Below are positions 295-63,830 of a DNA stretch of 64,000 nt, piece by piece. The stretch spans positions 153,974 to 217,973 of IMG/VR virus record IMGVR_UViG_3300022745_000017, one strand, 5' to 3'. A program made the translations under genes and the position numbers. Each line of letters opens with the position of its first letter. Within the stretch, counting starts at the first letter, position 1. The notes beneath the pieces were generated by a model. That model had not been told where the DNA came from and did not search any database. It saw nothing but the letters and a program-made list of their open reading frames with translations.

Positions 295-300
295 GCACAC

Positions 301-336
301 GTCCTCACTGATGCTATTGTACGCATCAGTGAGGAC
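301..336 (+). terminator. Hairpin terminator
   Basis: GTCCTCACTGATGC / GCATCAGTGAGGAC 14-bp stem, 8-nt loop, followed by AACTCTTTT. Confidence 0.7.
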
Positions 337-368
337 AACTCTTTTCATCCAATTATTTATTTGACACT

Positions 369-842
369 ATGAAAATCGTAACAGACCAATCCCTTATGTC
401 GGTTAGAAAAGGCATCATCATTCACGGAGTCAATGGACAAGGTAAGATGAATAAAGGCCTAGCCAAACAAATCAGACAAGCTTACCCTGTCGTTTACGAA
501 GACTACATGAACCGACAAGCTACACACGGCTTGTTGCTCGGTAGTATCATTGTCAGTGAGATTACTCCAGACCTAATTGTCATCAGCGGTGTATCCCAGA
601 AGTACTACGGTAATGACCCGAATGTGACTTATGCCAGTTTAGGTGCTATTAAGAAGATTTTCAGACTCGTGACCAACTACAATCTGAAGTACCAGCAAGG
701 GCGCTTAGAGATTCACTACCCGAGGATTGGTGGACAATTAGGCAATCTCCCATGGCCACAAACACAACGAGAAATAGAGGCTGAATTCAGCGATCAACTA
801 ACCTACGTCTTACACGACTACCGGCAAGACAGTGTGCCTTAG
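369..842 (+). CDS. Macro domain (ADP-ribose binding/hydrolase) protein
   Basis: IIIHGVNGQGKMNKGLAKQIRQAYP and IHYPRIGGQLGNLPW match the two macro-domain loops (HGxNxxGxMGxGxA; PxIGxGxxGxxW), with substitutions. Confidence 0.8.
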   Translation: MKIVTDQSLMSVRKGIIIHGVNGQGKMNKGLAKQIRQAYPVVYEDYMNRQATHGLLLGSIIVSEITPDLIVISGVSQKYYGNDPNVTYASLGAIKKIFRLVTNYNLKYQQGRLEIHYPRIGGQLGNLPWPQTQREIEAEFSDQLTYVLHDYRQDSVP

Positions 843-887
843 AATTCTATGTTGCCTACCCTTTAAATTTTTACATAGAAACTTATC

Positions 888-2975
888 ATGTCTACTTTTG
901 CTCGAAGGATGTTTGGTTTTGTAAATGTCCGAGAGGAAGACGGTGTTGTTTATGTGGAGGGCGTTAATGCCCGAATCATGCATGACAACATCGACAACCT
1001 CTGGCGGACATCGCGTGTATGTGCAAATGCTTTTTTGCATAAAGACCTCTCTAGTTTTTCTTTTCCTTCCTTTTATGCTCTGGACATTTGCTACTCGTTT
1101 GAGCGAATGCTCGCACAGCCAGAAGCTTTCTCAGGGGTTCGAACGATCTCCAAAATCGTAGAGGGTTTGCTGCAAAACACTTGGTTGAAAAAGACCAGGC
1201 AACCTCACCACGACCGACTTGATTACTCACGTCTAAAGCTACTCAATGTAACTCTGCGAGACTACCAAAGCGACTTGCTGGTAAACTACGCCAAGAACAC
1301 AGACCTCTATGACCTCAAAGGCTACTTGTTTGGCGCAGCTCCGGGTACTGGCAAGACGATTACCTCTATTGCACTCCACCTCTGCTTGAAAAACGATTTA
1401 GCGATCGTCACAGTCCCACAGGTAGCCATTGAAGACGTATGGGTGCAAACGCTCACTGGTATCTTTAAAAGGCCTGTGAAGGTATGGACTTCACACATGA
1501 CTGAGGAGCCCAAGGGCGATGAGGATGTCATTGTCATCCACTATGAGTTCCTCAAGAAGCTCTTGGAGATGATCTATAAGTTTCGTCATCGCAAAGTGAC
1601 GAACATCTTAGATGAGTCGCACAACTTCAATACGATTGGCACACTGCGCAGCGACCTCTACGTTGACCTCACCAGCCAGTCTAATTGCAAGGATGTGCTT
1701 TGGCTCTCAGGAACACCCATCAAGGCACTCCCGATCGAAGCAGCACCACTCATCCGCTGCATCGATCCAAAGTTCACTGACGACTGCTATAACCGGTTTA
1801 AACGCATTTATGCAGGCGCTACTAACCAAGCCCTAGAGATCTTGCAACACCGCCTTGGCATCATCTCGATGTATGTCAAAAAGGATGTCTTGAACTTAGC
1901 CCCTCCAATTTTCCAAGATGTCAAAGTCGTCTTGAAAAATGCGAGGGACTACACCTTGCCAGCTATCCGGCAGGCGATGATAGAGTTTACGCAAAAGCAA
2001 GAGATCTACTACGCCTCACGTCGCAAAGAAGACGAGGAGTTTTTCTACGGGATCTTGAACACTTACGCAGCCACTCTTAAATCAGCTGCGCAAAAGAGCG
2101 AGTACCAAGCTTATCGCAGGTCTTTAGATATCGTGATTCGCTCCAGTGGCTCTGCGATTGCCAGCGATGAGATCAGGGCTTGTAATGAGTTTGAAACACG
2201 CTGCATCATGCCTATCCTCAATTATGAGGAGCGCAAGATGTTCAAAGATGTTCGCTCTGTCATCAAGTACGTTAAGCTCAAGATCCAGGGCGAGTGCTTG
2301 GGCCGTGTAGTGGGGGGCTTGCGTATTCAGTGCGCTGTTGACATGGCTAAGGTATTTGACTTCCAGTCGATCTGCGAGACCACTACTAAGAAAACAGTGG
2401 TGTTCACAAGCTACGTTCAGGTGTTGTTGGAAGGACTGCAAAACGTCAAAAACAATACTGACTACACTCCACTGAGCGCTTACGCAGAAAACTCAGGCAA
2501 ACTCCACGAAACTGTCAAAGAGTTCTACGACAATGAGAATGCAAACCCACTATTTGCTACTTACAAGACTCTCTCGACTGCTGTGCCACTTACAGCGGCA
2601 GACGTAGCTGTGATTTTTGATGCACCATTCAGAGACTACACTTTGCAACAAGCCATCGCCCGGATTCACCGCGATGACTCTCGCCCTGGGCACAAAATCA
2701 CCCAGGTGTACGTCTACCTCGTGAGCCTTGACACAGGTGAAGAGATTAACATCTCGTCGCGCTCCTTTGACATCCTCAAATGGAGTCAAGAGCAAGTCCA
2801 AGCCATCACAGGTGTGCAGTCCCCCTTCGATATCACGACGCTCCAGAGTCAAAATGACCCAGCTATGGAGTCTCTTGGTTGGTATCACGACTTCCAAAAC
2901 CACTGGGAAACCAGTAAAGAAGTGGAGCCGTTTACAGTCACGATGGGACAAACACCTAAGGCTTTGATGTGGTGA
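888..2975 (+). CDS. SNF2/SF2-like helicase of phiKZ-like phages
   Basis: Walker A AAPGTGKT, motif II DESH, motif III SGTP, motif VI QAIARIHR. Confidence 0.9.
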   Translation: MSTFARRMFGFVNVREEDGVVYVEGVNARIMHDNIDNLWRTSRVCANAFLHKDLSSFSFPSFYALDICYSFERMLAQPEAFSGVRTISKIVEGLLQNTWLKKTRQPHHDRLDYSRLKLLNVTLRDYQSDLLVNYAKNTDLYDLKGYLFGAAPGTGKTITSIALHLCLKNDLAIVTVPQVAIEDVWVQTLTGIFKRPVKVWTSHMTEEPKGDEDVIVIHYEFLKKLLEMIYKFRHRKVTNILDESHNFNTIGTLRSDLYVDLTSQSNCKDVLWLSGTPIKALPIEAAPLIRCIDPKFTDDCYNRFKRIYAGATNQALEILQHRLGIISMYVKKDVLNLAPPIFQDVKVVLKNARDYTLPAIRQAMIEFTQKQEIYYASRRKEDEEFFYGILNTYAATLKSAAQKSEYQAYRRSLDIVIRSSGSAIASDEIRACNEFETRCIMPILNYEERKMFKDVRSVIKYVKLKIQGECLGRVVGGLRIQCAVDMAKVFDFQSICETTTKKTVVFTSYVQVLLEGLQNVKNNTDYTPLSAYAENSGKLHETVKEFYDNENANPLFATYKTLSTAVPLTAADVAVIFDAPFRDYTLQQAIARIHRDDSRPGHKITQVYVYLVSLDTGEEINISSRSFDILKWSQEQVQAITGVQSPFDITTLQSQNDPAMESLGWYHDFQNHWETSKEVEPFTVTMGQTPKALMW

Positions 2976-2981
2976 TTAAAC

Positions 2982-3004
2982 TAAAATAACTCGGTCACAT
3001 ATAC
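2982..3004 (+). promoter_or_regulatory. Putative phage early promoter motif
   Basis: TAAAA-N9-CACATATAC; the same motif recurs at 7416, 11234, 13624, 18552, 55652 and 60047. Confidence 0.55.
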
Positions 3005-3786: not shown

Positions 3787-3822
3787 GCATACTCCCCCAG
3801 GCCTAGGCCTGGGGGAGTATGC
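3787..3822. terminator. Perfect 36-bp palindrome, probable bidirectional terminator
   Basis: GCATACTCCCCCAGGCCT|AGGCCTGGGGGAGTATGC between convergent genes; T-tract on the + side. Confidence 0.8.
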
Positions 3823-7057: not shown

Positions 7058-7342
7058 ATGCAACACCCTCCTTTCGGGGTGGTACACGTCCCGCTGATGG
7101 ATGTATCCCAGATCCCAAAAAGCCGGTATAAGGAAATCTACGACTTGATCGTTGAAAAGATTAAGTCGTTTATCAGAAACGCTTTACATTCATTTGCCGT
7201 TTTCCACACCTTCATAGAAGGATTGCGGCCGGCACCAGTGTTTGGGTGGGTGTGGTCGCAGGCCATGCGACCATTGTTGTGTGCCACTAACAAGGCGATG
7301 CTGCCAGAAATAAGAGCACCCCCGAGACGACAAACGCTTTGA
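7058..7342 (+). CDS. Hypothetical protein
   Basis: 94-aa ORF with strong SD (GAGAGGAGAG), followed by a hairpin. Confidence 0.65.
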   Translation: MQHPPFGVVHVPLMDVSQIPKSRYKEIYDLIVEKIKSFIRNALHSFAVFHTFIEGLRPAPVFGWVWSQAMRPLLCATNKAMLPEIRAPPRRQTL

Positions 7343-7357: not shown

Positions 7358-7406
7358 CATACCCCACACCACTACACCTTGAATGGATGTAGTGGTGTGG
7401 GGTATG
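7358..7406 (+). terminator. 19-bp stem hairpin
   Basis: CATACCCCACACCACTACA / TGTAGTGGTGTGGGGTATG; no U-tract, TATGTC at the base. Confidence 0.7.
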
Positions 7407-7415
7407 TCCGCCATG

Positions 7416-7439
7416 TAAAATATCTTAAACACATATAAC
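7416..7439 (+). promoter_or_regulatory. Putative phage early promoter motif
   Basis: TAAAA-N9-CACATATAAC(CCTTGTG). Confidence 0.55.
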
Positions 7440-8999: not shown

Positions 9000-9031
9000 C
9001 CTCCCTAGGACGTGAAAGCGTCCTAGGGAGG
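9000..9031 (+). promoter_or_regulatory. Hairpin that includes the SD of the next gene
   Basis: CCTCCCTAGGACG-TGAAAG-CGTCCTAGGGAGG; the GGAGG lies 3 nt before ATG 9035. Confidence 0.55.
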
Positions 9032-9034
9032 TTT

Positions 9035-9295
9035 ATGCTGTTTTTATGTATGAACACACCGTATAGAGTAGATGGGCCTTGTACGCTGTTTACTTCAACT
9101 GTAGACGGCGCTCCGCCCGAAGCAGTGAGCTTTCGCCTCGATGTGCCTTGTATGTCGTTCATGATTGATCGCAGTGAGTATGACGCTCTCCAGCGCTGGG
9201 CCAAAAACAACAACCTGAAAGGGGTCGATGCACTCTCGAACATTGTTTTATTAGCCCTAGACCAATTCATCACCAAGCAAAAGGAAACACCATGA
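9035..9295 (+). CDS. Hypothetical protein
   Basis: 86-aa ORF, GGAGG SD, ATGA overlap with the next gene. Confidence 0.65.
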   Translation: MLFLCMNTPYRVDGPCTLFTSTVDGAPPEAVSFRLDVPCMSFMIDRSEYDALQRWAKNNNLKGVDALSNIVLLALDQFITKQKETP

Positions 9296-11236: not shown

Positions 11237-11255
11237 AAACACAAGCACATATAAC
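11234..11255 (+). promoter_or_regulatory. Putative phage early promoter motif
   Basis: TAAAAA-N6-CACATATAAC(AATTGTG). Confidence 0.55.
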
Positions 11256-13543: not shown

Positions 13544-13559
13544 TGGCGTGAAGTTTGTG

Positions 13560-13595
13560 TAAGCAGACTGTGGGCCTAGGCCCACAGTCTGCTTA
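13560..13595 (+). terminator. Perfect 36-bp palindrome terminator
   Basis: TAAGCAGACTGTGGGCCT|AGGCCCACAGTCTGCTTA followed by CCTTTCTTTTTG. Confidence 0.8.
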
Positions 13596-13623
13596 CCTTT
13601 CTTTTTGTCTATTTAGATACGGA

Positions 13624-13633
13624 CACATATCAT
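13624..13633 (+). promoter_or_regulatory. Putative early promoter core
   Basis: CACATATCAT between the terminator and the NADAR gene. Confidence 0.45.
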
Positions 13634-21772: not shown

Positions 21773-21796
21773 ACCAACACCTCTATTAACGGCATA

Positions 21797-21829
21797 CGCA
21801 GACTGGTGGGATTACCCCACCAGTCTGCG
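21797..21829. terminator. Bidirectional terminator
   Basis: CGCAGACTGGTGGG-ATTAC-CCCACCAGTCTGCG; long T-tract on the + side, TATGCC on the - side. Confidence 0.85.
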
Positions 21830-21853
21830 CAGTGTTTTCTTTTTTTTTCTTTC

Positions 21854-22621
21854 TCACCAATTCAAGGGAACGGGTGGCTTGCCAAGACTCAATAAAGAAG
21901 CTGTGAGACTCTTAAACTCATTGTACTCAGCCTCAGAGACTTCGGTGAATTCATAGATCTCCTTGTCCTTGGCATTACACCCAACCATGCTTGACACCCC
22001 GAGGTTATCAAACTTAGCCTTGATGCGGTAAAAGCCTTTGGGCTTAGCTTCACCTTCGTCGAGAAACGGCAAGCCCTCAGCGTAGTCGTGCTCCAGGTAA
22101 AACTCAGCAACCATCAGAGGATCACTCTTAGCGCGAGGAGCAATCTCTAAGGACGTACAAAACAGCTTACCGATGGCTGTAGACTTGTACGTCGCAGTCG
22201 CTTTGTTGTAAGCCACGAGCCACACTTCACCCGTAGCTTCAGACTCCCAGAGCAACTTCTTGTTGATGGTAATAGCGTAGTTGAACGGGATGGTCTGTAC
22301 GATGTAGCCGCCGTGGTAGCCAGTGACCTTGGTCGTACTTTTTCCCATGCTATTATAGATATCGTCTTTCCAGCGATTGTATCCAATTACACACCCCATC
22401 AGACTGCGTCCCATGCAGATGCGTGGCGTCGAAGCGTTTTCAATTACCTCATCTTTGGCGGCGGTGTAAGGCAGTCGCGGGATGTAGACCTTTTGCACTT
22501 CCTTGTCAATGCGAAACAAGTGCTTGATGCCAAGGTCTTCAGGTGTAACGATCTTGGCATTCTTTCTCACTAGAGGTGATTGCAATTGCATCCAGTGGTC
22601 GATCTCTTCTAACTCAGTCAT
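21854..22621 (-). CDS. Conserved phiKZ-like protein, often called virion structural; possible ADP-ribosyltransferase-like fold
   Basis: LFRID...YIPR...ENASTPRICMGRSLMGCVIGY...ATGEVWLV pattern. Confidence 0.6.
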   Translation of the reverse strand: MTELEEIDHWMQLQSPLVRKNAKIVTPEDLGIKHLFRIDKEVQKVYIPRLPYTAAKDEVIENASTPRICMGRSLMGCVIGYNRWKDDIYNSMGKSTTKVTGYHGGYIVQTIPFNYAITINKKLLWESEATGEVWLVAYNKATATYKSTAIGKLFCTSLEIAPRAKSDPLMVAEFYLEHDYAEGLPFLDEGEAKPKGFYRIKAKFDNLGVSSMVGCNAKDKEIYEFTEVSEAEYNEFKSLTASLLSLGKPPVPLNW

Positions 22622-22932
22622 TTCTTATCTCCTTTAGCCAAAGCCTTTTCTTTCCAATGCTTGCTTAGATTCACACAGGCCTTCTCACAGGTATCGAACT
22701 TCTTGCAACACGCGCTACAAGGCTCTAACAGCTCTACAGGCTGTATCCCTAGTGTCTTGGCAATCGTCACCATCTCCGGCAGTGTTACAGGCGCTAAGCG
22801 CCCTTTCTCGATCTCCACCAACCGAGTAACTGTCATGCGCGACTTAGCTCGAAAATCAAGTACCGACATGCGAGCAGCTTTTCGCACTTTGTTGACGTTC
22901 TCACCAAAGCCTTTTGCAGATAGAGAATCCAT
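22618..22932 (-). CDS. XRE-type helix-turn-helix regulator with a Cys-rich tail
   Basis: GENVNKVRKAARMS...RLVEIEKG...IAKTLGIQPVELL HTH pattern, then CSACCKKFDTCEKAC. Confidence 0.75.
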   Translation of the reverse strand: MDSLSAKGFGENVNKVRKAARMSVLDFRAKSRMTVTRLVEIEKGRLAPVTLPEMVTIAKTLGIQPVELLEPCSACCKKFDTCEKACVNLSKHWKEKALAKGDKK

Positions 22933-22938
22933 TTTGTT

Positions 22939-23220: not shown

Positions 23221-23240
23221 GATGGAGGTATCCTTTTCAG

Positions 23241-24764: not shown

Positions 24765-24916
24765 GGCGTTTGACTTGCTATGATTTTCAAAGGTTGGTAG
24801 GGATTGACTCAGGAGTCAGACATAGTATCAAAGAGCGTTTTCAAATGTAAAAGGTAGGTGTGTTATTTTTCTTTTGATATGTTATGTTTATTGCTTTTAG
24901 CCTAGGGGTGAGCCCT

Positions 24917-27791: not shown

Positions 27792-28110
27792 AGTCTTGGT
27801 TGGTGTAGGGTGATTTGGTTAGCCACCAGTAACTCGAACCAACCAAGACTCTAGACAAATGTCATTACTCAGCAACTACCTACTTGGCGGTGAGGCCAGT
27901 AGGTAGTTGCTGAGTATGCCGCATGTTCGATTATTCTTCAGTCACTTATTATCTAACTGAGTCATGGACGGTAAGGGTTGTGGCAAAATGGGCAAGACGA
28001 TGCTCCATCACAACCCCTTGACTACTCGTAAGCTTACGGGTAACAAAACAACACCCTCAAAGGTTAACTAGGCATAGAACCCTTGAGTCTTAAGTTAGTT
28101 TGCTTAAGGC
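27792..28110. ncRNA. Six back-to-back hairpins after the capsid gene; terminator plus candidate structured RNA
   Basis: Stems at 27792-27850, 27866-27916, 27975-28016, 28023-28042, 28056-28087 and 28087-28110 in the longest intergenic gap of the window. Confidence 0.45.
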
Positions 28111-29623: not shown

Positions 29624-31243
29624 ATGTTCCCACAGGAAATCGAAGATGAAATCGACCGCATCACAACACCGTTCAATGAACGGATCGCTAGTGGGTTGGC
29701 TACCCACGAGCTAAAGAAGTCGGCCACCTACATCGACAAGGTGTTAAAGAGTGTGGCCCGAGGATTTCCTTCGAGTGTGCGCTATGCCGGCTATCGCCCA
29801 CTGACACCCGAAGAAGAGTTTGCCAAGCTCACGAGTATGCGCGCCCAAGCGCCTGCGACTCTGGACATCGCTAACTCGACACTGCGCATGTTTTTGTACA
29901 TGTTTGAATTCCATCAGAGCGACGGTCAGATCCACAAGATCGACAAACCACTTCAATTGCTGCACGGCAGCATTGGTGGCGCTGGACGGTTTGAGATCGC
30001 AGGATCAAAATTCCTGGCTTCTCCTGTCTTAGCAGACCAAGTCTTCTCGGTGATGGAAGACCACGTCTTCATTAAGCTGATGAAAGCCAAGCTCATTGTC
30101 AAGCAGCTCTCCTATCACTGGATGGCCGCTGGCATTCGGGACTCCGCTTATGTCGCCTGGGCTGACGTTTATAATGAACGCTCTACGCCTGGCGCTCCAC
30201 GCAACCCGATCACAGCTAAGACGTGCCTGGCCCATTACTTGTTTTGTAAGTTTGGGGTCACCAAAGCCTTCCGCAAATTCGCTCATGCGGAGATCAAGGT
30301 CGGTGGCATTGAGATCACGGAACAGATGTACCCGCCTGACAAGTGGTTGATCTGTACGTCGGTTCAAATCAAACCCAAGACTTACCGGCTCTTTTACGAA
30401 CCCTCTGACATTCGTGTAGCCGTGCGGATCGATCAGCTCAACACCATGACCCGGTGTTTGTTAGCTGGCTTGTTTTATGTGGTCGACCATTTCCCCCAGC
30501 GCATGTTAGCCCGAGAGATCGATAACATCGATACTTGGCGCGTGATGTTGGGCTTGCTCATCTGGAGTGGCACAGTCAACGAGGGCAAGCTCCTCTCGAA
30601 TGTGAACAACCATTTCAACAGCTTAGATGAGTATGTCGACAACATGGTCATTGACAAGTTGCGTGTGATTAACGTGCCTTGTCAGGATGTCTATGAGCTG
30701 TTTGGCTACGTGATCAGTAACATGATCAAGTGGCTGCAAGAAAGTAGCCGTACCAGTAACTCTATGTGGAATAAAGAGTTGGTGGTGTTGCCGTTCATCT
30801 ATTACAAGGTGATCGAAGCAATTCACTTGCTTTACTTCAAGCTCAATGCAAGCCAGCACAGAGAGCTCACCCTACAGCGCGTTGAGAAAGCACTCCAGCA
30901 CTTGACGCCGGGTGTGATCTACAAGGTGACAAGAAACGGTGAGGTATCGACCACCTCGTGTCCTGGTGACAATCCAGCTACACGCATGACATCCATCATT
31001 GTTCCGCAAGCCAAGAGTGCTTCTGGCACCAGTGCTGACCGGACATCGACCACTGATCCGTCACAACGGCTCCACCCGTCGACCATTGATACCGGATGCT
31101 ACCTGGCACTGCCAAAAGCAGATCCGTCAGGCCGTGGTAGAATTAACCTCGCTGTACAAACCACCGACACCGGCTTGATCGTGCGCGATCCACGCTATAT
31201 CGACATTTTGAATGAAGCTGAACAATACTTCAGCAGAAGGTAA
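29624..31243 (+). CDS. Non-virion RNA polymerase beta subunit, N-terminal part (phiKZ gp123-like)
   Basis: 539 aa; FLASPVLAD, HYLFCKFG, GDNP, LHPS...LPKADPSGRGRIN; position two genes after MCP. Confidence 0.85.
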   Translation: MFPQEIEDEIDRITTPFNERIASGLATHELKKSATYIDKVLKSVARGFPSSVRYAGYRPLTPEEEFAKLTSMRAQAPATLDIANSTLRMFLYMFEFHQSDGQIHKIDKPLQLLHGSIGGAGRFEIAGSKFLASPVLADQVFSVMEDHVFIKLMKAKLIVKQLSYHWMAAGIRDSAYVAWADVYNERSTPGAPRNPITAKTCLAHYLFCKFGVTKAFRKFAHAEIKVGGIEITEQMYPPDKWLICTSVQIKPKTYRLFYEPSDIRVAVRIDQLNTMTRCLLAGLFYVVDHFPQRMLAREIDNIDTWRVMLGLLIWSGTVNEGKLLSNVNNHFNSLDEYVDNMVIDKLRVINVPCQDVYELFGYVISNMIKWLQESSRTSNSMWNKELVVLPFIYYKVIEAIHLLYFKLNASQHRELTLQRVEKALQHLTPGVIYKVTRNGEVSTTSCPGDNPATRMTSIIVPQAKSASGTSADRTSTTDPSQRLHPSTIDTGCYLALPKADPSGRGRINLAVQTTDTGLIVRDPRYIDILNEAEQYFSRR

Positions 31244-33302: not shown

Positions 33303-33324
33303 ATTGCTCGGTTAAACGGCACAA

Positions 33325-33360
33325 CTCCAGGTGGGGACGCTTACGCGTCCCCACCTGGAG
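33325..33360. terminator. Bidirectional hairpin
   Basis: CTCCAGGTGGGGACGC-TTAC-GCGTCCCCACCTGGAG between convergent genes. Confidence 0.8.
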
Positions 33361-33380
33361 CTAACCTCTATTTATTTTTC

Positions 33381-44277: not shown

Positions 44278-45444
44278 ATGCCGGCAATCGTTTCCATGCG
44301 AGGGATTCGCAACGGACTGACCAAAGAGTGGGAGTACCTCGACCACATCAACTACCCGTGCGCAGTTTTGTGGCATATCTTTCGCGTCATTTACGCTTTC
44401 ACTAGCGATCAAAAGCTCATCGACCTATCTGTACTCAAAGCCGGTCACACTGGCTTTAGTGGGACAGCTCAACAGCTCATCGACGCTTTTCCAGCCGAGG
44501 TAGTGTTATCTCCCATCGTTGACACACCACCCCTGCGACGAGGGACATACATGCCAGCCAGTAGCCTAGGCTACTGCGCAGCAGCGTGTACACAAGCCGG
44601 TGAATACTCTGTCAATCAAGCACGTCCAGACTTTGATCACTTACGATTAGCTAGCTATGCTTTCGAGTCTATCTACGGACAAGAAGCAGCTAACCTAGCT
44701 TATCGCAAACAACTCTGTTTGGTCAATGGCTTGCTCCACCCAGTCTTTAGAGTAGAGAAAGACCTCGTGATTCTGGATGGCAATAAGACTGTTCTCAAAT
44801 CCAAACAAGAGCAGCTCGGGATCATTATTTTGCCAGACAAGTGTTACGCGAGTTATCACGCTTATCCGGCTGATATGGTCTTACCTCCTTACGCCGGAGT
44901 ACTCTTTAGCGTGGCAGGCTATCTCTTTTCTGCGGACAGCCCAGGGGTGAGTATCGCACAAAACGGCACGCTTCAGATGGACTTCCGGCGCATGGACATG
45001 GCCAAGAAGCTCTATGAAGCAAGTAGCATCATAGACCTCAGTAGCCTCAGCTTTGACCCACTAGCACTAGCCGATGCTTACACCTTCACCCAGCAAGACA
45101 TCGCTGAGGTATTGGCACTCAAGCAAAGCTTTGTGATCGCTCTCACTGACCGTGTGACAATCTTAGAGCAAGCAGTCAAGCTTGAAGGCAGAGATGGTTG
45201 TAGCTTTTCACTACCCATCTCAGACTACTACGGAACCCCTACGCTCAGGGCACTCCCCCTGAAGTGGGGCGCTGGTAGGCTTGTAGATTGGTTCAGTGAT
45301 CCTTATGCATATGCGGCTAGAGGCGCTGTTTCACCACAGTCTTTTCTCGATGAGCTGTACTTGCCTAAGCTAAACAAGCCGTCTAACCCTGTCAGGTATT
45401 ACGGGGCCAGCTTCATTGAGTTGGTCACAGGTTTCCCGACATAA
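44278..45444 (+). CDS. Putative virion structural protein (phiKZ-like)
   Basis: Repeated CLVNGLLHP / VLFSVAGYLF motifs; SFVIAL. Confidence 0.65.
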   Translation: MPAIVSMRGIRNGLTKEWEYLDHINYPCAVLWHIFRVIYAFTSDQKLIDLSVLKAGHTGFSGTAQQLIDAFPAEVVLSPIVDTPPLRRGTYMPASSLGYCAAACTQAGEYSVNQARPDFDHLRLASYAFESIYGQEAANLAYRKQLCLVNGLLHPVFRVEKDLVILDGNKTVLKSKQEQLGIIILPDKCYASYHAYPADMVLPPYAGVLFSVAGYLFSADSPGVSIAQNGTLQMDFRRMDMAKKLYEASSIIDLSSLSFDPLALADAYTFTQQDIAEVLALKQSFVIALTDRVTILEQAVKLEGRDGCSFSLPISDYYGTPTLRALPLKWGAGRLVDWFSDPYAYAARGAVSPQSFLDELYLPKLNKPSNPVRYYGASFIELVTGFPT

Positions 45445-45451
45445 GCACACG

Positions 45452-45485
45452 CCCTGTACTGTGGCCGCAAAGCCACAGTACAGGG
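45452..45485. terminator. Bidirectional hairpin
   Basis: CCCTGTACTGTGGC-CGCAAA-GCCACAGTACAGGG between convergent genes. Confidence 0.8.
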
Positions 45486-45486
45486 T

Positions 45487-47997
45487 TTATGCCGCTTGGT
45501 TTATCTTCACGAACTCATTGATGGGTCTATTCATCTTTGGCAATACCAGATTGCTATCGTCTAGTAGACAGATGCTTGCATTTTGCAAAGCACCATAAAC
45601 ACCCTCGTAGTGAGAAATCAAGATCGTCTGCGAAAACTCACCCGTGTTAATGAGCTCAGAGATATAATGCATCGCTCGGTTGCGATGAGAGTCATCGAAG
45701 TTGCGAGAGAACTCATCGAGCATGAGGGGCCAGTGACTGCACTTCATGATCTTTTGGGCTACTGAGCGAAACGCAAAGTTAACCATTTCAATCATAGCTT
45801 CAGAGCCTTCACTAACATCACTGCGTACAGGGGAGTCAGGCACCTTCAGGGGGAAACAGTAGTCTAGCTCTACGCTCTCGCCACTATAGCGACACGGCAG
45901 CACCCGCAGGTCATATGTCCAAACCTTTGCAATCACGTCATTGACTTCATTGACAAAGCCTTCCATGAAAGCGTAGATACCCTGCGCAATCAATCCATCT
46001 GTCGGAGACAAAGCCCTACAGATTTCTGTCAATCCATTCTCATTGTCCTCGTAAGACTTGATCTGAGCTTTAATGGCTGCAATCAGTTGGTTTTGTGAAT
46101 TGATTGACTTGATCTGAGCCTCGATACTACCTAACTCGGAGGAGAGTTCATTGATGAGATTGTTGTAAGCTAGGCGGCGCTTGACTTCTAGCTCATTGAT
46201 ACAAGCTTGCTTATACTCCTCGTAGACCTTGACCATCTCAGTCCTGCGCTGCTGAAGCGCAGCTTTAGCGACTCTGGCTTGATTGACCTTCTTGACAAAC
46301 CGATCGATTTGGTCGATCTCTTGCATGACTATTTTCAAGTCATGCTCAGCTTGCTCACAGATCTTCTTAGAGTCGTCAAGTGACTGCTGCGCTCCACTGA
46401 CTAAGACTTGCATTTGCTTAGTGAGCTCTGCTGCTTTTATACTCAGGGCCTTTAGCCGCGTCTCTATTTGAATATGCTCGTCAAAAGCGTTGATGACATC
46501 AGAGATACTCAGGGACTTTTCTGTGATGACTTTGTTAGATTTCAGGTAACTCCACAAAGACTCAAGCACAGGGTTTGCTGCCATCAGATCAGAAATTCTC
46601 TTGACCGTTGCCCGGCACTCTTTAATTTGCTCTAGAATGCCTCTAGAACTCTCTATAACGGCCTCAGTCGCGTTTATTTCTATCGCTAGTAAACTTATGC
46701 TAACTCGCAGTTTCTCAGCCTCTGAAGGGCTATAAATGGATGAGAACTTGTGATCGCATTTGGGACAGGTAACGTCTAAATCATGCTTGTGAGACTCTAG
46801 GGCTGCTAGCTTTTGCTGGTCATGGACTTGCTTGGCTGATAGCGCTTGGTGCTTTGTAAATGCAGCTGTATACTTCTCAGAGGTTTCTTGGTAGTAGATC
46901 GGGTTGAGCTGCTTGCGAATGTCATCAGGGATAGCGTTAGCTAACTCCATCAGAGTGACTTTGCAGTGATCAAAGCTCAGAGAGACCGCTTGCAAATCGT
47001 GCTCGATGGATTTGAACCTGCGCTGACCATCCAGCGTGTCGATCTCGCTGCGCACCCTCTCTAAGCTCGCTGTGAGCTCCGAGGTGTTTTCTACATTAGC
47101 GATCTGTAGTGCGCGAATGATCTCGCCGTGTTGCTGATGCACTCGGGATAGCGTGTCAGCCCGGCTCAGCAAGGTTGCTTTGTCCGCCGTGTATTTATGC
47201 AAGAGCAAATCAGCTTCTTGATCACCGAGATAGTCATCAGCAGTCAGTCCGTTGGCATCGATCTGTGACAACACCCTGTCAAGAGCACTAGACAACTGAG
47301 CAGCTTTTACTTCTACTGAGCGCTTTTTCTCCCCGGCTTGTGCCAAGGACTGCACAATCGGCATCTTGTGTTCCAGCAAGATCTGAATGACTTCTTGGAG
47401 CTCTTGAGACTTTGCTTGGAGTCTCTTTTGCTCCTCGTCTAAAATCACCTTCTCAGTCTCTATCAGCAACTGCTTCTTTGCCAGCTTGAGAGCGCCTTTG
47501 GTATCTCTGAGCTGGCCTGACAAATCCTTATAGAGCTTCATAGCGAAGGTGTAGTCTGCGTCGCAGATACGCAAGAACCACTCTTTACGCTTGCCAGTAT
47601 CCATGTTAGTAAAAAGCTCTTTACCAGAGATGAGTCGGCTGAGCTCAGGAGTGAGGCCTAGGTGCATGCGAACGAGTTCTCGCTGCATGGTAATGCCTCT
47701 ACTCTCATTGAGACCTACACCGTCTTTATAGAACTGATACTTGGGACTGGGGGATTTCGTCATCTCCGCTGCCCAAACGCTGCCATTGAACTCTCGCTCG
47801 ACATACTTGTAGCCACCCTCCAAATAGTCACCTGCATCAGGAGGCAACATATTGAACTCTGACTGTAGACTAGACTTACCACAACCGTTCGTACCCAGTA
47901 TCAGTAAGGTAGGGTCATTAAACTCGATTTCGATGTCATTGATACCCGATAAAGCTAACCGGTGATAGCCTTTAAGAATGAGCTTGCGATAGGTCAT
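45487..47997 (-). CDS. SbcC/Rad50-like SMC-family ATPase
   Basis: Walker A GTNGCGKSS, long coiled coils, zinc hook CPKC, SEGSEAM signature variant, MLDEF, ILISH. Confidence 0.92.
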   Translation of the reverse strand: MTYRKLILKGYHRLALSGINDIEIEFNDPTLLILGTNGCGKSSLQSEFNMLPPDAGDYLEGGYKYVEREFNGSVWAAEMTKSPSPKYQFYKDGVGLNESRGITMQRELVRMHLGLTPELSRLISGKELFTNMDTGKRKEWFLRICDADYTFAMKLYKDLSGQLRDTKGALKLAKKQLLIETEKVILDEEQKRLQAKSQELQEVIQILLEHKMPIVQSLAQAGEKKRSVEVKAAQLSSALDRVLSQIDANGLTADDYLGDQEADLLLHKYTADKATLLSRADTLSRVHQQHGEIIRALQIANVENTSELTASLERVRSEIDTLDGQRRFKSIEHDLQAVSLSFDHCKVTLMELANAIPDDIRKQLNPIYYQETSEKYTAAFTKHQALSAKQVHDQQKLAALESHKHDLDVTCPKCDHKFSSIYSPSEAEKLRVSISLLAIEINATEAVIESSRGILEQIKECRATVKRISDLMAANPVLESLWSYLKSNKVITEKSLSISDVINAFDEHIQIETRLKALSIKAAELTKQMQVLVSGAQQSLDDSKKICEQAEHDLKIVMQEIDQIDRFVKKVNQARVAKAALQQRRTEMVKVYEEYKQACINELEVKRRLAYNNLINELSSELGSIEAQIKSINSQNQLIAAIKAQIKSYEDNENGLTEICRALSPTDGLIAQGIYAFMEGFVNEVNDVIAKVWTYDLRVLPCRYSGESVELDYCFPLKVPDSPVRSDVSEGSEAMIEMVNFAFRSVAQKIMKCSHWPLMLDEFSRNFDDSHRNRAMHYISELINTGEFSQTILISHYEGVYGALQNASICLLDDSNLVLPKMNRPINEFVKINQAA

Positions 47998-48068: not shown

Positions 48069-49046
48069 ATGCTGCACCCTAACGAAGACTTTGACCATAA
48101 ATCTCTTCCAGTATCCAAGCTGCGCTGGTACTCAAGAGCAGTAGCTGCGAACAATAAACCGATCAACTCAAATCTCCTAGAGGTCATCCCCTATGAAGAC
48201 ATGTCAGAGTTTGACGGACAAGCTACTGATAACTACGACGAGGTGACGACTGTTGCTAAAGATGTAGAGGGACGAGTCAAGTCAGTGACTTCCAAAGTCA
48301 CCTCTACCATCACAGCCGCTTGGCTGCCCATCAACAACGGCAACCGACTGACACCGCCTAATATCCAGCGCGGTGAGCGACTCATGATTTACCAGCTCGG
48401 TGACTCATCTCGGTACTTTTGGACAACACTCTACCAAGACAACCACTTGAGGCGCTTAGAGACTGTGATCTATGGGTTTAGTGCTACAGCCGATCACAAC
48501 GCTACACTCTCCGCAGACAACATGTACTTGTTTGAGATCAGCACGCACACAGGCGTCGTTGGTCTCTACACCAGTAAGGCCAATGGCGAAGCGTTTGCCT
48601 ATACACTCCAGCTCAATACCAAAGAAGGCTATTTCACCATCAAAGACGATGTAGGTAACTTCATCCATCTCAATAGTGCGGAGCAGCGTATTGAGTTCGG
48701 AAATGCTTCAAAGTCTTTGTTTGACATGATTGGCAAAAGCGCGAGCTTGACGACCTTGGATTCGATCAGCTTAAAGACGGGTGCTTACGACCTGGAATGC
48801 AAGAGCTACAACGTCACCTGTGCTGGTAGCTCGACACACAAGTCAGGCTCCTTTACGATAGACTCTACTTTGGTAGTGACAAAGCTCTTGACAGCCTCTG
48901 GTGGATTAGGAGTGACTCAGGGGCAGCCTTGCAGCCTACCTGGTGGAACCAGTGTCGGTGGTAGCATGAGTGTGAGCGGTGAGATACAGTGTACTGTGAG
49001 TAGAGCGACTGGAAACATGTACGCTAGCACTTTCATACGGACATAA
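48069..49046 (+). CDS. Baseplate central spike / Gp5-like protein (phiKZ gp164-like)
   Basis: AAWLP...NRLTPPNIQRGERLMIYQLGDSSRYFW, RRLETVIYGFS, beta-repeat C-terminus. Confidence 0.8.
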   Translation: MLHPNEDFDHKSLPVSKLRWYSRAVAANNKPINSNLLEVIPYEDMSEFDGQATDNYDEVTTVAKDVEGRVKSVTSKVTSTITAAWLPINNGNRLTPPNIQRGERLMIYQLGDSSRYFWTTLYQDNHLRRLETVIYGFSATADHNATLSADNMYLFEISTHTGVVGLYTSKANGEAFAYTLQLNTKEGYFTIKDDVGNFIHLNSAEQRIEFGNASKSLFDMIGKSASLTTLDSISLKTGAYDLECKSYNVTCAGSSTHKSGSFTIDSTLVVTKLLTASGGLGVTQGQPCSLPGGTSVGGSMSVSGEIQCTVSRATGNMYASTFIRT

Positions 49047-49052
49047 ACCGCT

Positions 49053-49090
49053 TATGCACTGGAGGGAGCTTTGGCTCCCTCCAGTGCATA
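49053..49090. terminator. Bidirectional hairpin
   Basis: TATGCACTGGAGGGAGC-TTTG-GCTCCCTCCAGTGCATA. Confidence 0.8.
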
Positions 49091-52713: not shown

Positions 52714-52751
52714 GGTACACTGGGGACTGGCTAGCCAGTCCCCAGTGTACC
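52714..52751. terminator. Perfect 38-bp palindrome, bidirectional
   Basis: GGTACACTGGGGACTGGCT|AGCCAGTCCCCAGTGTACC. Confidence 0.8.
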
Positions 52752-53605: not shown

Positions 53606-53755
53606 GAAGTGGGTTTACAAACGCCTATTTTTACACTAGGCATCTATAGAAATTGATATGTGATTGCTTTATTATTCTCCGTAGAGATAGATATGTAGGC
53701 CTTGTGCAGTGGCCTGGTCTATCTCTTTTAATCTCTAACATCCAGGAAAAGCCAA

Positions 53756-57531: not shown

Positions 57532-58281
57532 ATGGCAAGAGAGACCAAAAAGATCATTGTCGATATTGAGGCACTGTTTGATATGCGCTTAGGGGTGTTG
57601 ATTACGCTCCTGGGAGCTGAGGCAGCGTTTGAAGCGACCAAAGACGCCAGCTACTACACCCGCACTTATCAAGATATCACGACTCCAGCAGGCCCCTTGA
57701 CAAAGGAGATTTACCGCAAAGTCCTTAACAAAGACCCAGCGGCAATCTGGCAGGTCTCAATGCGCACAAAGATATACGAGTTCATCGTGAGTCGCTGTGC
57801 GAAGGTGCGAGAAGGCTCTTTTCGATCGCCTATTCATGCTGATCCAGAAATCTGTATCAATATCCACGGGTATTCGCTCACTGAGAAAGAGGAGAGTAGC
57901 CTCATCGCAGGTATGCGTGATTTGACGGGAGCTCTCTACGATGTCAGTACCTTGGACATGGGAGATTCTGAGCTCTCCCCGGCGTGGCTAAAGGCACATG
58001 CTAGAGCTTTGATCATGTACGATCCGGTGAACTGGGTCAATACAAATTCTTCAGCTCTGATCAAGAGTGCTCCAAACATCGATTTCACAGTGTTTGCTCC
58101 CAGACTTTTGGAAAACAATGACCACCTCGAAGAGGTTAAGAAAGCCAAAGCGACCTACAGTGGCGATGTGTTTAACTTGTTCGAGCTGACATGCAGCCAG
58201 TGCTTCCAACTCAGTCTATTGCCTGTGAGTGCTTTTTGTGCAGACACTCCGGCTAACACAGATAGCTTTTTGGAGGCATAA
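57532..58281 (+). CDS. Conserved phiKZ-like protein with a degenerate HAD-like N-terminus
   Basis: IIVDIEALFDMRLG; ICINIHGYSLT; LIMYDPVNW. Confidence 0.7.
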   Translation: MARETKKIIVDIEALFDMRLGVLITLLGAEAAFEATKDASYYTRTYQDITTPAGPLTKEIYRKVLNKDPAAIWQVSMRTKIYEFIVSRCAKVREGSFRSPIHADPEICINIHGYSLTEKEESSLIAGMRDLTGALYDVSTLDMGDSELSPAWLKAHARALIMYDPVNWVNTNSSALIKSAPNIDFTVFAPRLLENNDHLEEVKKAKATYSGDVFNLFELTCSQCFQLSLLPVSAFCADTPANTDSFLEA

Positions 58282-58282
58282 G

Positions 58283-58316
58283 CCCTACTACCGGTGGTTT
58301 GCCACCGGTAGTAGGG
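58283..58316. terminator. Bidirectional hairpin
   Basis: CCCTACTACCGGTGG-TTTG-CCACCGGTAGTAGGG. Confidence 0.8.
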
Positions 58317-58354
58317 ATGTGTGCCAATTTAAATCGAAGCCGCACCACTGCTAC

Positions 58355-60046: not shown

Positions 60047-60056
60047 CACATATCAT
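60047..60056 (+). promoter_or_regulatory. Putative promoter core
   Basis: CACATATCAT in an AT-rich divergent gap. Confidence 0.4.
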
Positions 60057-62596: not shown

Positions 62597-62613
62597 ACCT
62601 TAAGCACTTGTGC

Positions 62614-62650
62614 TACACTACCTGGATGCTCATCGCATCCAGGTAGTGTA
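62614..62650 (+). terminator. 16-bp stem hairpin
   Basis: TACACTACCTGGATGC-TCATC-GCATCCAGGTAGTGTA. Confidence 0.7.
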
Positions 62651-62696
62651 TGTGCATTCTTATGACTGTTTTTCTTTTTTTCTTTGGAGAGCTACC

Positions 62697-63785
62697 ATGC
62701 CAGCTATTTCTACTTCCCCGTTATTCATCGTTGGTCCAGAAGAAAACCTGGCAGCTGTAGATGTTTACAAAGATGACCCGACCAAGGTCAAAGCTATCTC
62801 TACAGTACAAAAGATCGATGACTACTTGATTTCTGTAGACTCAGGGATTGGCAATAAGTGGGATGCTCCGCCAGCGGTCACCCCAGCCCAAGAAGTGCCC
62901 CCAGATAACTGGGGACAAACCAAGACAATTGAGTTAACGGGCGACGCCATTAAGAAAGCAGTGTTGACAGACTCAGGTGCAGCTGCTGCTTTTTCACAGT
63001 TAGATAAAGGGCTCAAGTCGGTTATTACGGGTGAGTACAGCATCAAGAAGAATGTATCAAACGTACAGCAAATCGTTAACGGCAAGATCAAGTATATCAA
63101 TAGCTTGGCTGCACCGACGATCGATGCAATGCAGAAGATGGTCAACAGTCTTTACGGGACGATGTGCTCACCTTTGCTCAAAGACAAGGCTGCTACCATT
63201 ACGTTCACGACGAACTTCTTAAAGCTAGCGCAGTTGCACAAGATCGCAGGGATGTTGGCATGTATCATGTCGTCACCTCTACTGCATCCTGATACATTGC
63301 TGCAAGTCGTCAAAAACATGATCCCCCACATCAAGTTAGCGGGAGATATCGACGGCTTGAAAGCACTGTGCTTTTCGGAGCACGCTAAGCTCATCAACCG
63401 AACTGACCCAGATTTCTTTCGTGTGTTCTTGCATAACTACAAGATCCCCACCAATGAAGACAGTATCGACTACATCGATTTATACGAAGAAGTCGTGAGC
63501 TCGTTCTTAGAAGGCCATCCTACCTGGGGTTTGTTTACTCGCAACGGTGAGCCTGGCTGGAGTGATTGCGCCGATATCGCTTACGCCAGTGATGACTTCA
63601 AGAAGCTACTCAAAGCCAAAGCCACTAACATCTTCTACGACATTGACGGCGCTGACCCAGAGACTTTTGACTTGGCTAGCAATACTGCCAAAGAGAAGTA
63701 TTGGTACGCGGTCGCTAAGGACTTCCCATTCGTGAATACCAAAGATGAGATCGCTCGTTTATACCTGATGGTAAAAGCGCCATAA
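62697..63785 (+). CDS. Putative virion structural protein (phiKZ-like)
   Basis: ATG 62697 with GGAG SD; GPEENLAAVDVY; AYASDDFKKLL. Confidence 0.7.
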   Translation: MPAISTSPLFIVGPEENLAAVDVYKDDPTKVKAISTVQKIDDYLISVDSGIGNKWDAPPAVTPAQEVPPDNWGQTKTIELTGDAIKKAVLTDSGAAAAFSQLDKGLKSVITGEYSIKKNVSNVQQIVNGKIKYINSLAAPTIDAMQKMVNSLYGTMCSPLLKDKAATITFTTNFLKLAQLHKIAGMLACIMSSPLLHPDTLLQVVKNMIPHIKLAGDIDGLKALCFSEHAKLINRTDPDFFRVFLHNYKIPTNEDSIDYIDLYEEVVSSFLEGHPTWGLFTRNGEPGWSDCADIAYASDDFKKLLKAKATNIFYDIDGADPETFDLASNTAKEKYWYAVAKDFPFVNTKDEIARLYLMVKAP

Positions 63786-63786
63786 G

Positions 63787-63824
63787 CCCTCTGTACGCTG
63801 GGATTACTCCCAGCGTACAGAGGG
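63787..63824. terminator. Bidirectional hairpin
   Basis: CCCTCTGTACGCTGGGA-TTAC-TCCCAGCGTACAGAGGG. Confidence 0.8.
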
Positions 63825-63830
63825 TATGTC

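What the first reader, a model, noticed from the sequence alone, without database searches (positions are those of the whole stretch)
295..63830. Long hairpins followed by TRTGY(C) rather than a U-tract: candidate non-canonical terminator of the phage-encoded RNAP
Seen: every convergent gene junction has a 14-19 bp GC-rich hairpin, and many lack a U-run. At or near the 3' base of the stem there is a recurring TATGC/TGTGC/TATGTC. Plus-strand sites are 3818, 7403, 9034, 27915, 45488, 58320, 62651 and 63825. Minus-strand sites are the reverse complements at 295-299, 3787-3791, 21791-21796, 33318-33323, 45445-45449 and 58275-58280. Classical T-tracts occur mainly on the side facing early-type operons (301, 3787, 13560, 21797 on +). 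The motif mostly follows virion or replication genes (MCP, portal, head proteins, SbcC). Known: phiKZ-like phages use two RNAPs, and TATG is the phiKZ late-promoter consensus. Inference: either the non-virion RNAP terminates at hairpin+URUGC, or the motifs are TATG-type starts firing antisense RNAs into convergent genes, or they mark RNA processing sites.
Basis: partly seen in the sequence, partly recalled or inferred. Interest (0 to 1): 0.72.

Follow-up and report, generated by a model that had tools for sequence, protein, structure and literature searches.

The report
Hairpin-plus-TATGCC terminators of a phiKZ-like phage
The long hairpins followed by TATGCC are real and far beyond chance. 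They are this uncultured jumbo phage's version of the conserved "hairpin + TTATG.." transcription-stop signal already mapped in phage phiKZ, so the finding is sound but mostly a new example of a known element.

Summary
All 14 listed sites exist.

**Enrichment in the 218-kb genome**
- T[AG]TG[CT]C lies at the 3' base of 22 of 86 hairpin flanks that follow a gene end. Background is 2% (P ~5e-18).
- It occurs in 1 of 140 same-strand 5' flanks and 3 of 54 flanks with no gene behind them.

**Conservation**
- The tail (consensus TATGCCGt) is single-stranded and the stems are unrelated in sequence.
- It recurs after hairpins in 21 distant relatives (GC 32-59%; 39/142 flanks, P ~4e-46) and in phiKZ.
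- The published phiKZ terminator motif is hairpin + TTATKYYGT (Putzeys 2024).

**What it marks**
- In phiKZ the mapped RNA 3' ends fall 2-8 nt after the stem, within or just past TATG.
- None of 32 such sites carries a mapped start site. The antisense-promoter reading is therefore disfavoured.
- In a freshwater metatranscriptome, capsid-gene RNA contigs stop inside the 27866-27916 hairpin.

**Link to the non-virion polymerase: suggestive only**
- 0 of 9 early-type units here end in the motif.
- In phiKZ the figures are early 1/8 and late 15/25.

**What is new**
- At 50% GC the tail is not U-rich, so the signal is sequence-specific.
- Its core equals the TATG word that the phiKZ nvRNAP beta-like subunit binds on the non-template strand. 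The homologue here is window 29624-31243.

Verdict: new member of a known kind.

The parts
301..336 (.). Hairpin (14 bp stem) after a + gene. It has an adjacent T-run on + (T-tract class). The TGTGC on - (295-299) is not behind a minus-strand gene.
3787..3822 (.). Bidirectional hairpin (16 bp, loop CTAG) at the convergent junction 3784/3840. GCATA and TATGC form the outer stem pairs (TATG 3818-3821 on +, 3788-3791 on -). A T-run follows on +.
7358..7408 (+). Hairpin (21 bp) after ORF 7058-7342, with TATGTC at 7403-7408. A CACATAT promoter-like site lies at 7430.
9000..9039 (+). Hairpin (13 bp) followed by TTTATGCTG (TATG 9034-9037), then a T-run.
13559..13606 (+). Hairpin (17 bp, loop CTAG) with an adjacent T-tract. 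This is a canonical-type terminator without the motif.
21791..21850 (.). Bidirectional hairpin 21795-21831 at the convergent junction. TATGCC lies on - (21791-21796), behind the DnaB-helicase gene block. A T-tract lies on +.
27866..27920 (+). Terminator of the major capsid gene: 21-bp stem with TATGCC at 27915-27920. Metatranscriptome contigs end at 27889.
33318..33362 (.). Bidirectional hairpin 33323-33362. TGTGCCGTTTAAC lies on - (33318-33323), behind the virion structural gene 33381-36065. The + side is T-rich.
45438..45493 (.). Bidirectional hairpin 45452-45485. TATGCC lies on + (45488-45493). TGTGC (45445-45449) and TATGTC (45438-45443) lie on -, behind the SbcC-like gene.
49040..49090 (.). 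Hairpin 49053-49090 at a convergent junction. TATGTC lies on - (49040-49045), 7 nt from the stem.
52714..52751 (.). Hairpin (17 bp, loop CTAG) at a convergent junction. It is T-rich on + and has no motif on either side.
58275..58325 (.). Bidirectional hairpin 58281-58318. TGTGCC lies on + (58320-58325) and TATGCC on - (58275-58280).
62614..62655 (+). Hairpin (16 bp) with the TATGTGC tail (62649-62655). This is a weak variant.
63781..63830 (.). Hairpin 63787-63824. TATGTC lies on + (63825-63830) and a loose TATGGC on -.
29624..31243 (+). Gene for the homologue of phiKZ gp123, the nvRNAP beta-like subunit that binds non-template TATG. It is the inferred reader of the motif.
   Evidence: The structure is described in PMC12809450.
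25600..27777 (+). Major capsid protein gene. Its 3' end is followed by hairpin + TATG.. in this phage, in phiKZ and in most relatives.

Best explanation
The hairpin + T(A/G)TG(C/T)C(G) elements are the transcription-stop (RNA 3'-end-forming) signals of a phiKZ-like, nucleus-forming-type jumbo phage. They are the same kind of element as the conserved phiKZ/201phi2-1 terminator motif 'GC-rich stem-loop + TTATKYYGT'.

**Shown**
- The motif is a single-stranded tail directly 3' of stems that have unrelated sequences.
- It sits only on the strand or strands on which a gene ends.
- It is conserved across relatives from 32 to 59% GC.
- In phiKZ, mapped RNA 3' ends fall inside or just after it, and no 5' ends do.

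**Inferred**
- The polymerase transcribes the stem, the RNA hairpin forms, and the transcript is released about 6-8 nt later, within UAUGCC.
- At 50% GC this tail is not U-rich. It therefore acts as a sequence-specific pause/release element that takes the place of the U-tract.

**Inferred with less support**
Its gp123-like beta subunit (window 29624-31243) binds non-template-strand TATG in phiKZ.
- Early units made by the virion RNAP use ordinary hairpin + T-tract terminators.
For: **Enrichment and strand logic**
- 22/86 flanks behind a gene end carry the motif, against 3/54, 1/140 and a 2% background (P ~5e-18).
- Motif starts cluster from -3 to +2 relative to the first base after the stem.
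- The tail is not complementary to the 5' flank: 1.2 of 6 pairs in register.
- The stems are all different in sequence.

**Conservation**
- The consensus here is TATGCC(g/t).tTtt. In 21 IMG/VR relatives it is ttTATGcCgtta.
- In the relatives 39/142 flanks carry it, against 0.9% background (P ~4e-46).
- phiKZ hairpins carry TTATG(Y)(Y)GTTA on one or both strands.
- The published motif is BCCYCCCCHWWDGGGRRGGBYTTATKYYGT, defined on 61 mapped terminators (PMC10914365).
- 201phi2-1 motif A is stated there to resemble it (PMC11512511).

**RNA ends**
- phiKZ TTS coordinates (bioRxiv supplement) laid on the genome fall 2-8 nt after the stem (mode 8), at -1, +1 or +2 relative to the G of TATG. The MCP terminator T057 is one of them.
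- 0/32 of these sites have a TSS within 3 nt.
- In this phage, RNA contigs of run X6 cover the MCP gene at depth 7-11 and end at 27889, inside the hairpin. Nothing follows up to 28695, while a DNA contig of X2 crosses the hairpin.

**Synteny**
- The order DnaB, gp119-like, MCP, gp123, gp124 is the same as in phiKZ, with terminators at the same junctions.

**Link to the nvRNAP**
- 0/9 units starting at the TTCAGTCACATATATC promoter family end in the motif.
- The region 112-146 kb has these promoters and only T-tract hairpins.
- phiKZ units end at TATG-type TTS in 1/8 (early), 4/12 (middle) and 15/25 (late) cases.
- gp123 binds non-template TATG (PMC12809450).
- 7 of 14 pocket residues are identical here, against 30% identity overall.
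Against: - No 3'-end mapping exists for this phage. The only RNA data are assembled contigs of one metatranscriptome at one site, and contigs lose depth near ends anyway.
- ONT 3' ends in phiKZ cannot tell termination from processing followed by hairpin protection.
- The polymerase assignment rests on small numbers (p = 0.06) and, in this phage, on an untested promoter family called 'early' by analogy.
- The gp123 pocket is reported as incomplete in the transcribing complex, and half of its residues differ here.
- If the 3' end lies 6-8 nt after the stem, TATG is not in the -3..+1 register used at promoters.
- 25 of 86 gene-end hairpins have neither the motif nor a T-tract, so the motif is not obligatory.
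- Gene calls are my own crude ones.
Confidence: 0.72

Rival explanations
1. The element is an RNA processing, stability or export tag. Transcripts are cut, or trimmed back to the hairpin. The retained hairpin + UAUGCC 3' tail is then recognised by a phage RNA-binding protein or nuclease (for example for export from the phage nucleus or protection from exonucleases), rather than by the polymerase.
For: - The mapped 3' ends in phiKZ keep part of the motif on the RNA.
- Long perfect stems of 13-21 bp are more than termination needs and would block 3' exonucleases.
- Chimalliviruses separate transcription from translation and have an mRNA-binding protein thought to act in export (PMC13648698).
- ONT 3' ends do not distinguish termination from processing.
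Against: - The distance of 2-8 nt from the stem, with a mode at 8, is the geometry of intrinsic termination.
- ARNold classed the phiKZ sites as intrinsic terminators.
- Terminators of 201phi2-1 stopped transcription in a reporter trap in uninfected cells. Which motifs those carried was not checked.
- RNA depth after the MCP hairpin here is zero rather than reduced.
Confidence: 0.13
2. The TATG is a late-type promoter of the non-virion RNAP (G = +1). It restarts transcription after each hairpin and fires antisense RNA into convergent genes.
For: - TATG with G = +1 is the phiKZ late promoter and is necessary for nvRNAP initiation (PMC4666361).
- Some phiKZ late start sites lie just after terminators: P049 at 6 nt, P054 at 21 nt and P016 at 25 nt downstream.
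Against: - 0/32 hairpin-adjacent TATG sites in phiKZ have a TSS within 3 nt.
- The conserved positions downstream of the G (YYGT) are absent from late promoters.
- The validated late promoter P119L has no upstream hairpin.
- In the window alone about 13 motif instances face convergent genes.
- Separate CACATAT promoters follow the motif in tandem junctions.
- No RNA was found downstream of 27915.
Confidence: 0.07
3. The element acts at the DNA level or is a spreading repeat. The palindromes would be cruciform, recombination or replication signals, or copies of a small mobile palindromic element, and the flank would be its conserved end.
For: - The perfect palindromes are long.
- The phage encodes an SbcC-like palindrome nuclease subunit.
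- CTAG and GTAC words recur in loops and stems (seen by eye).
Against: - Stem sequences are unrelated between sites, so the hairpins are not copies of one element.
- The motif follows the direction of transcription: 22/86 against 3/54.
- The elements sit at gene ends only, and in phiKZ they coincide with RNA 3' ends.
Confidence: 0.03
4. The pattern is chance or a composition artefact, for example from stop-codon overlap or ATG start codons.
For: - TRTGY is short.
- Some instances overlap the stem end, or a start codon (9035).
Against: - P ~5e-18 in this genome and ~4e-46 in relatives.
- The 5'-side and shuffle controls are negative.
- The motif is conserved from 32 to 59% GC.
Confidence: 0.01

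Closest known systems
Conserved terminator motif of Pseudomonas phage phiKZ (Putzeys et al. 2024, Microlife; PMC10914365) and motif A of 201phi2-1 (PMC11512511)
   Same: - A GC-rich stem-loop at gene ends is followed by TTAT(G/T)YYGT.
- It is often bidirectional between convergent genes.
- It sits at the same syntenic junctions, for example after the capsid gene.
- The tail consensus here is TATGCCGt and in relatives TTTATGCCGTTA.
   Different: - Stems here are 13-21 bp, against 7-9 bp in phiKZ.
- Loops here are CTAG, GTAA or TTAC, against UUCG in phiKZ.
- At 50% GC the tail is G/C-rich (UAUGCCG) and not U-rich, so it would not pass as a canonical intrinsic terminator.
- There is no 3'-end mapping here.
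Canonical bacterial intrinsic (Rho-independent) terminator
   Same: - A stable GC-rich hairpin lies directly after a gene.
- In phiKZ the RNA 3' end is about 6-8 nt after the stem.
- A second class of hairpins in this genome (22 flanks) does carry an adjacent T-tract.
   Different: The motif class has no U-tract next to the stem. The 8 nt after the stem typically hold 2-3 U and a GCC core.
phiKZ late promoter TATG, bound on the non-template strand by nvRNAP subunit gp123 (PMC4666361; PMC12809450)
   Same: - It is the same four-letter word.
- The same polymerase family is encoded here (gp123 homologue at window 29624-31243; 7/14 pocket residues identical).
   Different: - Late promoters have no conserved hairpin upstream and no conserved YYGT downstream.
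- At the hairpin sites, RNA ends rather than starts.
Sequence-specific pause and termination signals read by the polymerase itself: T7 RNAP class II signal, the sigma70-dependent promoter-proximal pause, the core recognition element. This comparison is from my own knowledge and was not tested.
   Same: A short DNA or RNA word, rather than U-richness alone, halts the enzyme. In the sigma70-dependent pause, a promoter-like non-template word is re-read during elongation.
   Different: - The polymerases and the words are different.
- The T7 class II signal works without a hairpin.
- No biochemical evidence of this kind exists for jumbo-phage RNAPs.

Membership tests
phiKZ-type conserved terminator (hairpin + TTATKYYGT) | Stable GC-rich stem-loop in the intergenic space directly after a gene end | tested here: met
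   70 intergenic hairpins with at least 11 pairs in the genome. Window stems are 12-21 bp, dG -10 to -39 kcal/mol.
phiKZ-type conserved terminator (hairpin + TTATKYYGT) | Conserved single-stranded tail TTAT(G/T)YYGT starting 0-3 nt after the stem | tested here: met
   - The consensus is TATGCC(g/t).t, with starts from -3 to +2.
- The same script on phiKZ gives TTATGYYGTTA.
- The leading T of TTAT is weak here (37%).
phiKZ-type conserved terminator (hairpin + TTATKYYGT) | RNA 3' ends map a few nucleotides after the stem | tested here: inconclusive
   - At one site only, RNA contigs end at 27889 inside the hairpin and no RNA follows.
- In phiKZ itself the 3' ends lie 2-8 nt after the stem.
phiKZ-type conserved terminator (hairpin + TTATKYYGT) | Host genome is a phiKZ-like phage with split multisubunit RNAP genes | tested here: met
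   - The gp123 homologue hits phrog_2943 at E 4e-135 and is 30% identical to phiKZ gp123.
- MCP hits phrog_3231.
- Gene order is as in phiKZ.
- Chimallin and the other RNAP subunits were not looked for.
Canonical intrinsic terminator | Run of U (5 or more in about 8 nt) directly after the stem | tested here: not met
   Of the 30 gene-end flanks with a motif (22 strict, 8 loose), one loose flank has an adjacent T-run. A separate class of 22 flanks does have one.
phiKZ late promoter (TATG, G = +1) | Lies upstream of, and points into, a gene that it drives | tested here: not met
   - About 13 motif instances in the window face the 3' end of a convergent gene.
- In tandem junctions a separate promoter-like site follows.
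phiKZ late promoter (TATG, G = +1) | Triphosphate 5' end at the G | not testable with these tools
   There are no 5'-end data for this phage. In phiKZ, 0/32 hairpin-adjacent TATG sites have a mapped TSS within 3 nt.
Rfam RNA families | Match to any curated family at gathering score | tested here: not met
   0 matches in the window.

The most novel reading that the evidence does not exclude
One four-letter word, TATG on the non-template strand, would serve the jumbo-phage non-virion RNAP as both start and stop signal. Bare, it positions initiation. Directly behind a nascent RNA hairpin, it is caught by the same beta-lobe pocket of the gp123-like core subunit and pauses or destabilises the elongation complex. 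Termination inside the phage nucleus would then need neither a U-tract nor any host factor. A consequence is that early (virion RNAP) and middle/late (non-virion RNAP) units would be insulated by polymerase-specific terminators.
Probability: 0.25. Interest if true: 0.8.

Novelty: new member of a known kind. Interest (0 to 1): 0.5.

Why it matters
How the non-canonical RNA polymerases of nucleus-forming jumbo phages stop transcription is not known. Host termination factors are thought to be shut out of the phage nucleus (my inference, not checked here).

In AT-rich phiKZ the conserved tail looks like an imperfect U-tract, and it has been filed under intrinsic terminators. This phage and its high-GC relatives keep TATGCC(G) while losing U-richness. 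That shows the conserved feature is a specific word, not a weak RNA-DNA hybrid.

The word is the one the nvRNAP core binds at promoters. That gives a concrete, testable mechanism. It also offers a simple sequence rule, hairpin + TATGYC, for annotating transcription-unit ends in uncultured jumbo phages.

Tried and rejected
1. **Stem extension.** The idea was that GGCATA...TATGCC merely lengthens the helix. It was rejected: in-register complementarity is 1.2 of 6 pairs, which is chance level. It holds only at a few two-sided sites such as 3787.
2. **Repeat family.** The stems share no sequence.
3. **TATG as the promoter of the next gene.** Tandem junctions carry a separate CACATAT site, and phiKZ shows no TSS at such TATGs.
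4. **Search for this phage's late promoter.** I looked at k-mers in upstream regions, TTCTAT and the divergent junctions. Only CACATAT-type sites stood out, and no clear TATG-type late promoter class was defined.
5. **Gene-class test by function.** PHROGs named too few of the 30 proteins scanned to contrast motif-terminated with T-terminated genes.
6. **Nucleotide search against GenBank phages.** There was no match. Protein matches were only to Ralstonia RSL2/RsoM3USA and Burkholderia FLC9, at about 24% identity.
7. **Supplements of the PMC versions of both ONT-cappable-seq papers.** They are not held. The bioRxiv supplement was used instead. Only terminators T001-T076 and start sites P001 and P008-P066 were read.
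8. **Perfect-stem script for the hairpin after MCP in relatives (second part).** It was too strict and missed hairpins that one search lists. The one search list is the one to use.
9. **Read laying.** It could be used once and on contigs only, so only the MCP junction was examined.

Full report
**What the window is.**
- The window is bases 153,974-217,973 of a 217,973-bp virus record with direct terminal repeats. GC is 0.50.
- It has no nucleotide match among GenBank phages. Protein matches are weak and only to Ralstonia and Burkholderia jumbo phages.
- PHROGs identify these genes:
  - a phiKZ-type major capsid protein (25600-27777)
  - a virion structural protein (33381-36065, -)
  - an SbcC-like protein (45487-47997, -)
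  - a DnaB-like helicase (23241-24764, -)
  - an NAD ligase
  - an RNase H-like protein
  - a UvsX-like recombinase
  - a 'polymerase' (29624-31243)
- The 'polymerase' is the homologue of phiKZ gp123, the beta-like subunit of the non-virion RNAP, at 30% identity.
- Gene order around the capsid gene is that of phiKZ gp117-gp124.
- The phage occurs in several freshwater metagenomes and in one metatranscriptome.

**The observation.**
- A scan for inverted repeats (at least 11 pairs, at most 1 mismatch, loop 3-10) finds 83 hairpins in the genome. Of these, 70 are intergenic by my own gene calls.
- All eight convergent junctions of the window have a hairpin.
- Window stems are 12-21 bp, with dG down to -39 kcal/mol.

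**Is it more than chance?** Yes.
- Strict T[AG]TG[CT]C within -6..+8 nt of the 3' stem base occurs in 22 of 86 flanks that lie behind a gene end.
- It occurs in 3 of 54 flanks that do not, and in 1 of 140 same-strand 5' flanks.
- Background is 2.1% of 20-nt intergenic windows. The binomial P is about 5e-18, and 2000 shuffles never exceed 8.
- Thirteen of the 68 TATGCC in the genome sit at hairpin bases.
- Motif starts cluster between -3 and +2.
- The tail is not complementary to the opposite flank. It is a single-stranded 3' tail, not more stem.
- The stems themselves share no sequence, so this is not a repeat family.
- Among the 86 gene-end flanks, 22 have the strict motif, 8 a loose one, 22 an adjacent T-tract, 9 a T-run further on, and 25 neither.

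**Relatives.**
- A search with the capsid protein gave 29 IMG/VR loci with 36-47% identity and GC from 0.32 to 0.59.
- Their long hairpins are followed by the same tail (TTTATGCCG, TATGCTGT, TATGTCGT, TTATGCCCTTA). In at least nine loci the hairpin directly after the capsid gene carries it.
- In 21 non-redundant loci that have such hairpins, 39 of 142 flanks carry TATG[CT][CT], against 0.9% background (P ~4e-46). Only 3 of 142 5' controls carry it.
- Aligned on TATG, the consensus is TATGCC(g/t).tTtt in this genome and ttTATGcCgtta in the relatives.

**What is already known.**
- Putzeys et al. (2024) mapped 133 termination regions in phiKZ by ONT-cappable-seq. For 61 of them they reported a conserved motif: a stem-loop followed by a 'TTAT region', written BCCYCCCCHWWDGGGRRGGBYTTATKYYGT.
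- The 201phi2-1 study found a motif that 'strongly resembles' it.
- I fetched the phiKZ genome and ran the same script. GCCCTCCC-type hairpins are followed by TTATG(Y)(Y)GTTA on one or both strands.
- After the phiKZ capsid gene the sequence reads stem, then TTTATGTTGT.
- The element in the window is therefore the same kind of thing.

**Ends or starts?**
- I took phiKZ TTS coordinates T001-T076 from the bioRxiv supplement and laid them on the genome.
- For TATG-class hairpins the RNA 3' end is 2-8 nt after the stem (mode 8). That is at -1, +1 or +2 relative to the G. The capsid terminator T057 ends two bases after that G.
- I took TSS coordinates P008-P066 from the same supplement. None of 32 hairpin-adjacent TATG sites between 19.8 and 118 kb has a TSS within 3 nt. 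Eight have a separate TSS 6-49 nt further on.
- The validated late promoter P119L has no hairpin in front of it.
- In this phage, tandem junctions carry a separate promoter-like site 20-60 nt after the motif.
- The only RNA evidence for this phage comes from contigs of metatranscriptome X6.
  - They cover the capsid gene at depth 7-11 and stop at 27889, inside the 27866-27916 hairpin. There is nothing up to 28695.
  - A DNA contig of X2 runs across the hairpin.
  - This is weak evidence, from contigs at one site, but it points the same way.
Processing cannot be told apart from termination with these data.

**Which polymerase?**
- The genome has a strongly conserved promoter-like family, TTTTCTTCAGTCACATATATC, with a conserved leader of about 60 nt (about 13 copies). 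It also has a looser class, aaaCACATATCAC.
- By analogy with the highly conserved early promoters of phiKZ, I take the first family as early. This is inference.
- None of 9 units that start at these sites ends in the motif. The region 112-146 kb, which is full of them, has only T-tract hairpins.
- In phiKZ, units from early promoters end at a TATG-type TTS in 1 of 8 cases, middle 4 of 12, late 15 of 25. Fisher's test for early against the rest gives p = 0.059.

**Mechanism (inferred).**
- At 50% GC the tail UAUGCCG is not U-rich, so the weak-hybrid logic of canonical terminators does not apply.
- The conserved word is TATG plus YC(G).
- Of the 14 pocket residues named there, 7 are identical in the window's homologue and 2 are conservative changes.
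- A polymerase that carries its promoter-reading pocket along could re-read TATG during elongation and pause, letting the hairpin release the transcript.
- Against this:
  - The pocket is described as incomplete in the transcribing complex.
  - The register does not fit if release is 6-8 nt after the stem.
  - No biochemistry exists.
- I give this reading about one chance in four.

**Verdict.**
- The finding is real and robust, and the terminator reading is the best one.
- The element is a new member of a kind already described in phiKZ and 201phi2-1.
- The value added here is threefold: the tail survives without U-richness, it is conserved across a very wide clade, and it coincides with the nvRNAP's own recognition word.

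Noticed in passing
genome-wide; window 2996-3002, 7430-7436, 11246-11252, 13624-13630, 27930-27950 (variant), 53656-53662 (-), 60047-60053: CACATAT is the most enriched upstream word (23 of 141 upstream regions). One family, TTTTCTTCAGTCACATATATC plus a conserved leader of about 60 nt, occurs about 13 times, mostly at 112-146 kb outside the window. It drives single small genes. A second class reads aaaCACATATCAC. These are probably the phage's early and another promoter class.
   Followed up: partly
window 21854-33302: Gene order is DnaB-like helicase block (-), small gene, major capsid, 488-aa gene, gp123-like RNAP subunit, 696-aa gene. This is the same as phiKZ gp117.x-gp124, with terminator hairpins at the same junctions.
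   Followed up: partly
genome coordinates 21064, 38614, 68324, 127001 (outside the window): Four hairpins that lack both the motif and a T-tract are followed directly by (G)AAAACC. This may be a third tail type or chance.
   Followed up: no
window hairpins 3787, 13559, 52714 and others genome-wide: The self-complementary loop CTAG recurs (about 9 of 83 hairpins), as do GTAA/TTAC loops. Many stems contain GTACAG/CTGTAC. This was seen by eye and not tested statistically.
   Followed up: no
window 9034-9037 and ORF 9035-9295: The ATG inside the TATGCT tail is the start codon of the mechanically listed ORF 9035-9295, which overlaps the next gene's start (9292). Whether that ORF is real, and whether its mRNA is leaderless, is open.
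   Followed up: no
window 295-299 (-): The TGTGC on the minus strand next to hairpin 301-336 is not behind any minus-strand gene. It is probably not a functional instance.
   Followed up: yes
window 24700-30690 (runs X1-X10): The phage is near-identical in several freshwater metagenomes from 2018-2025. In metatranscriptome X6 the capsid gene is covered while its neighbours are nearly silent, which argues for real RNA rather than DNA carry-over.
   Followed up: partly
window 45487-47997 (-) and about 70 palindromes genome-wide: The phage encodes an SbcC-like subunit of a palindrome-specific nuclease, while its own genome carries about 70 perfect or near-perfect palindromes with arms up to 21 bp.
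   Followed up: no
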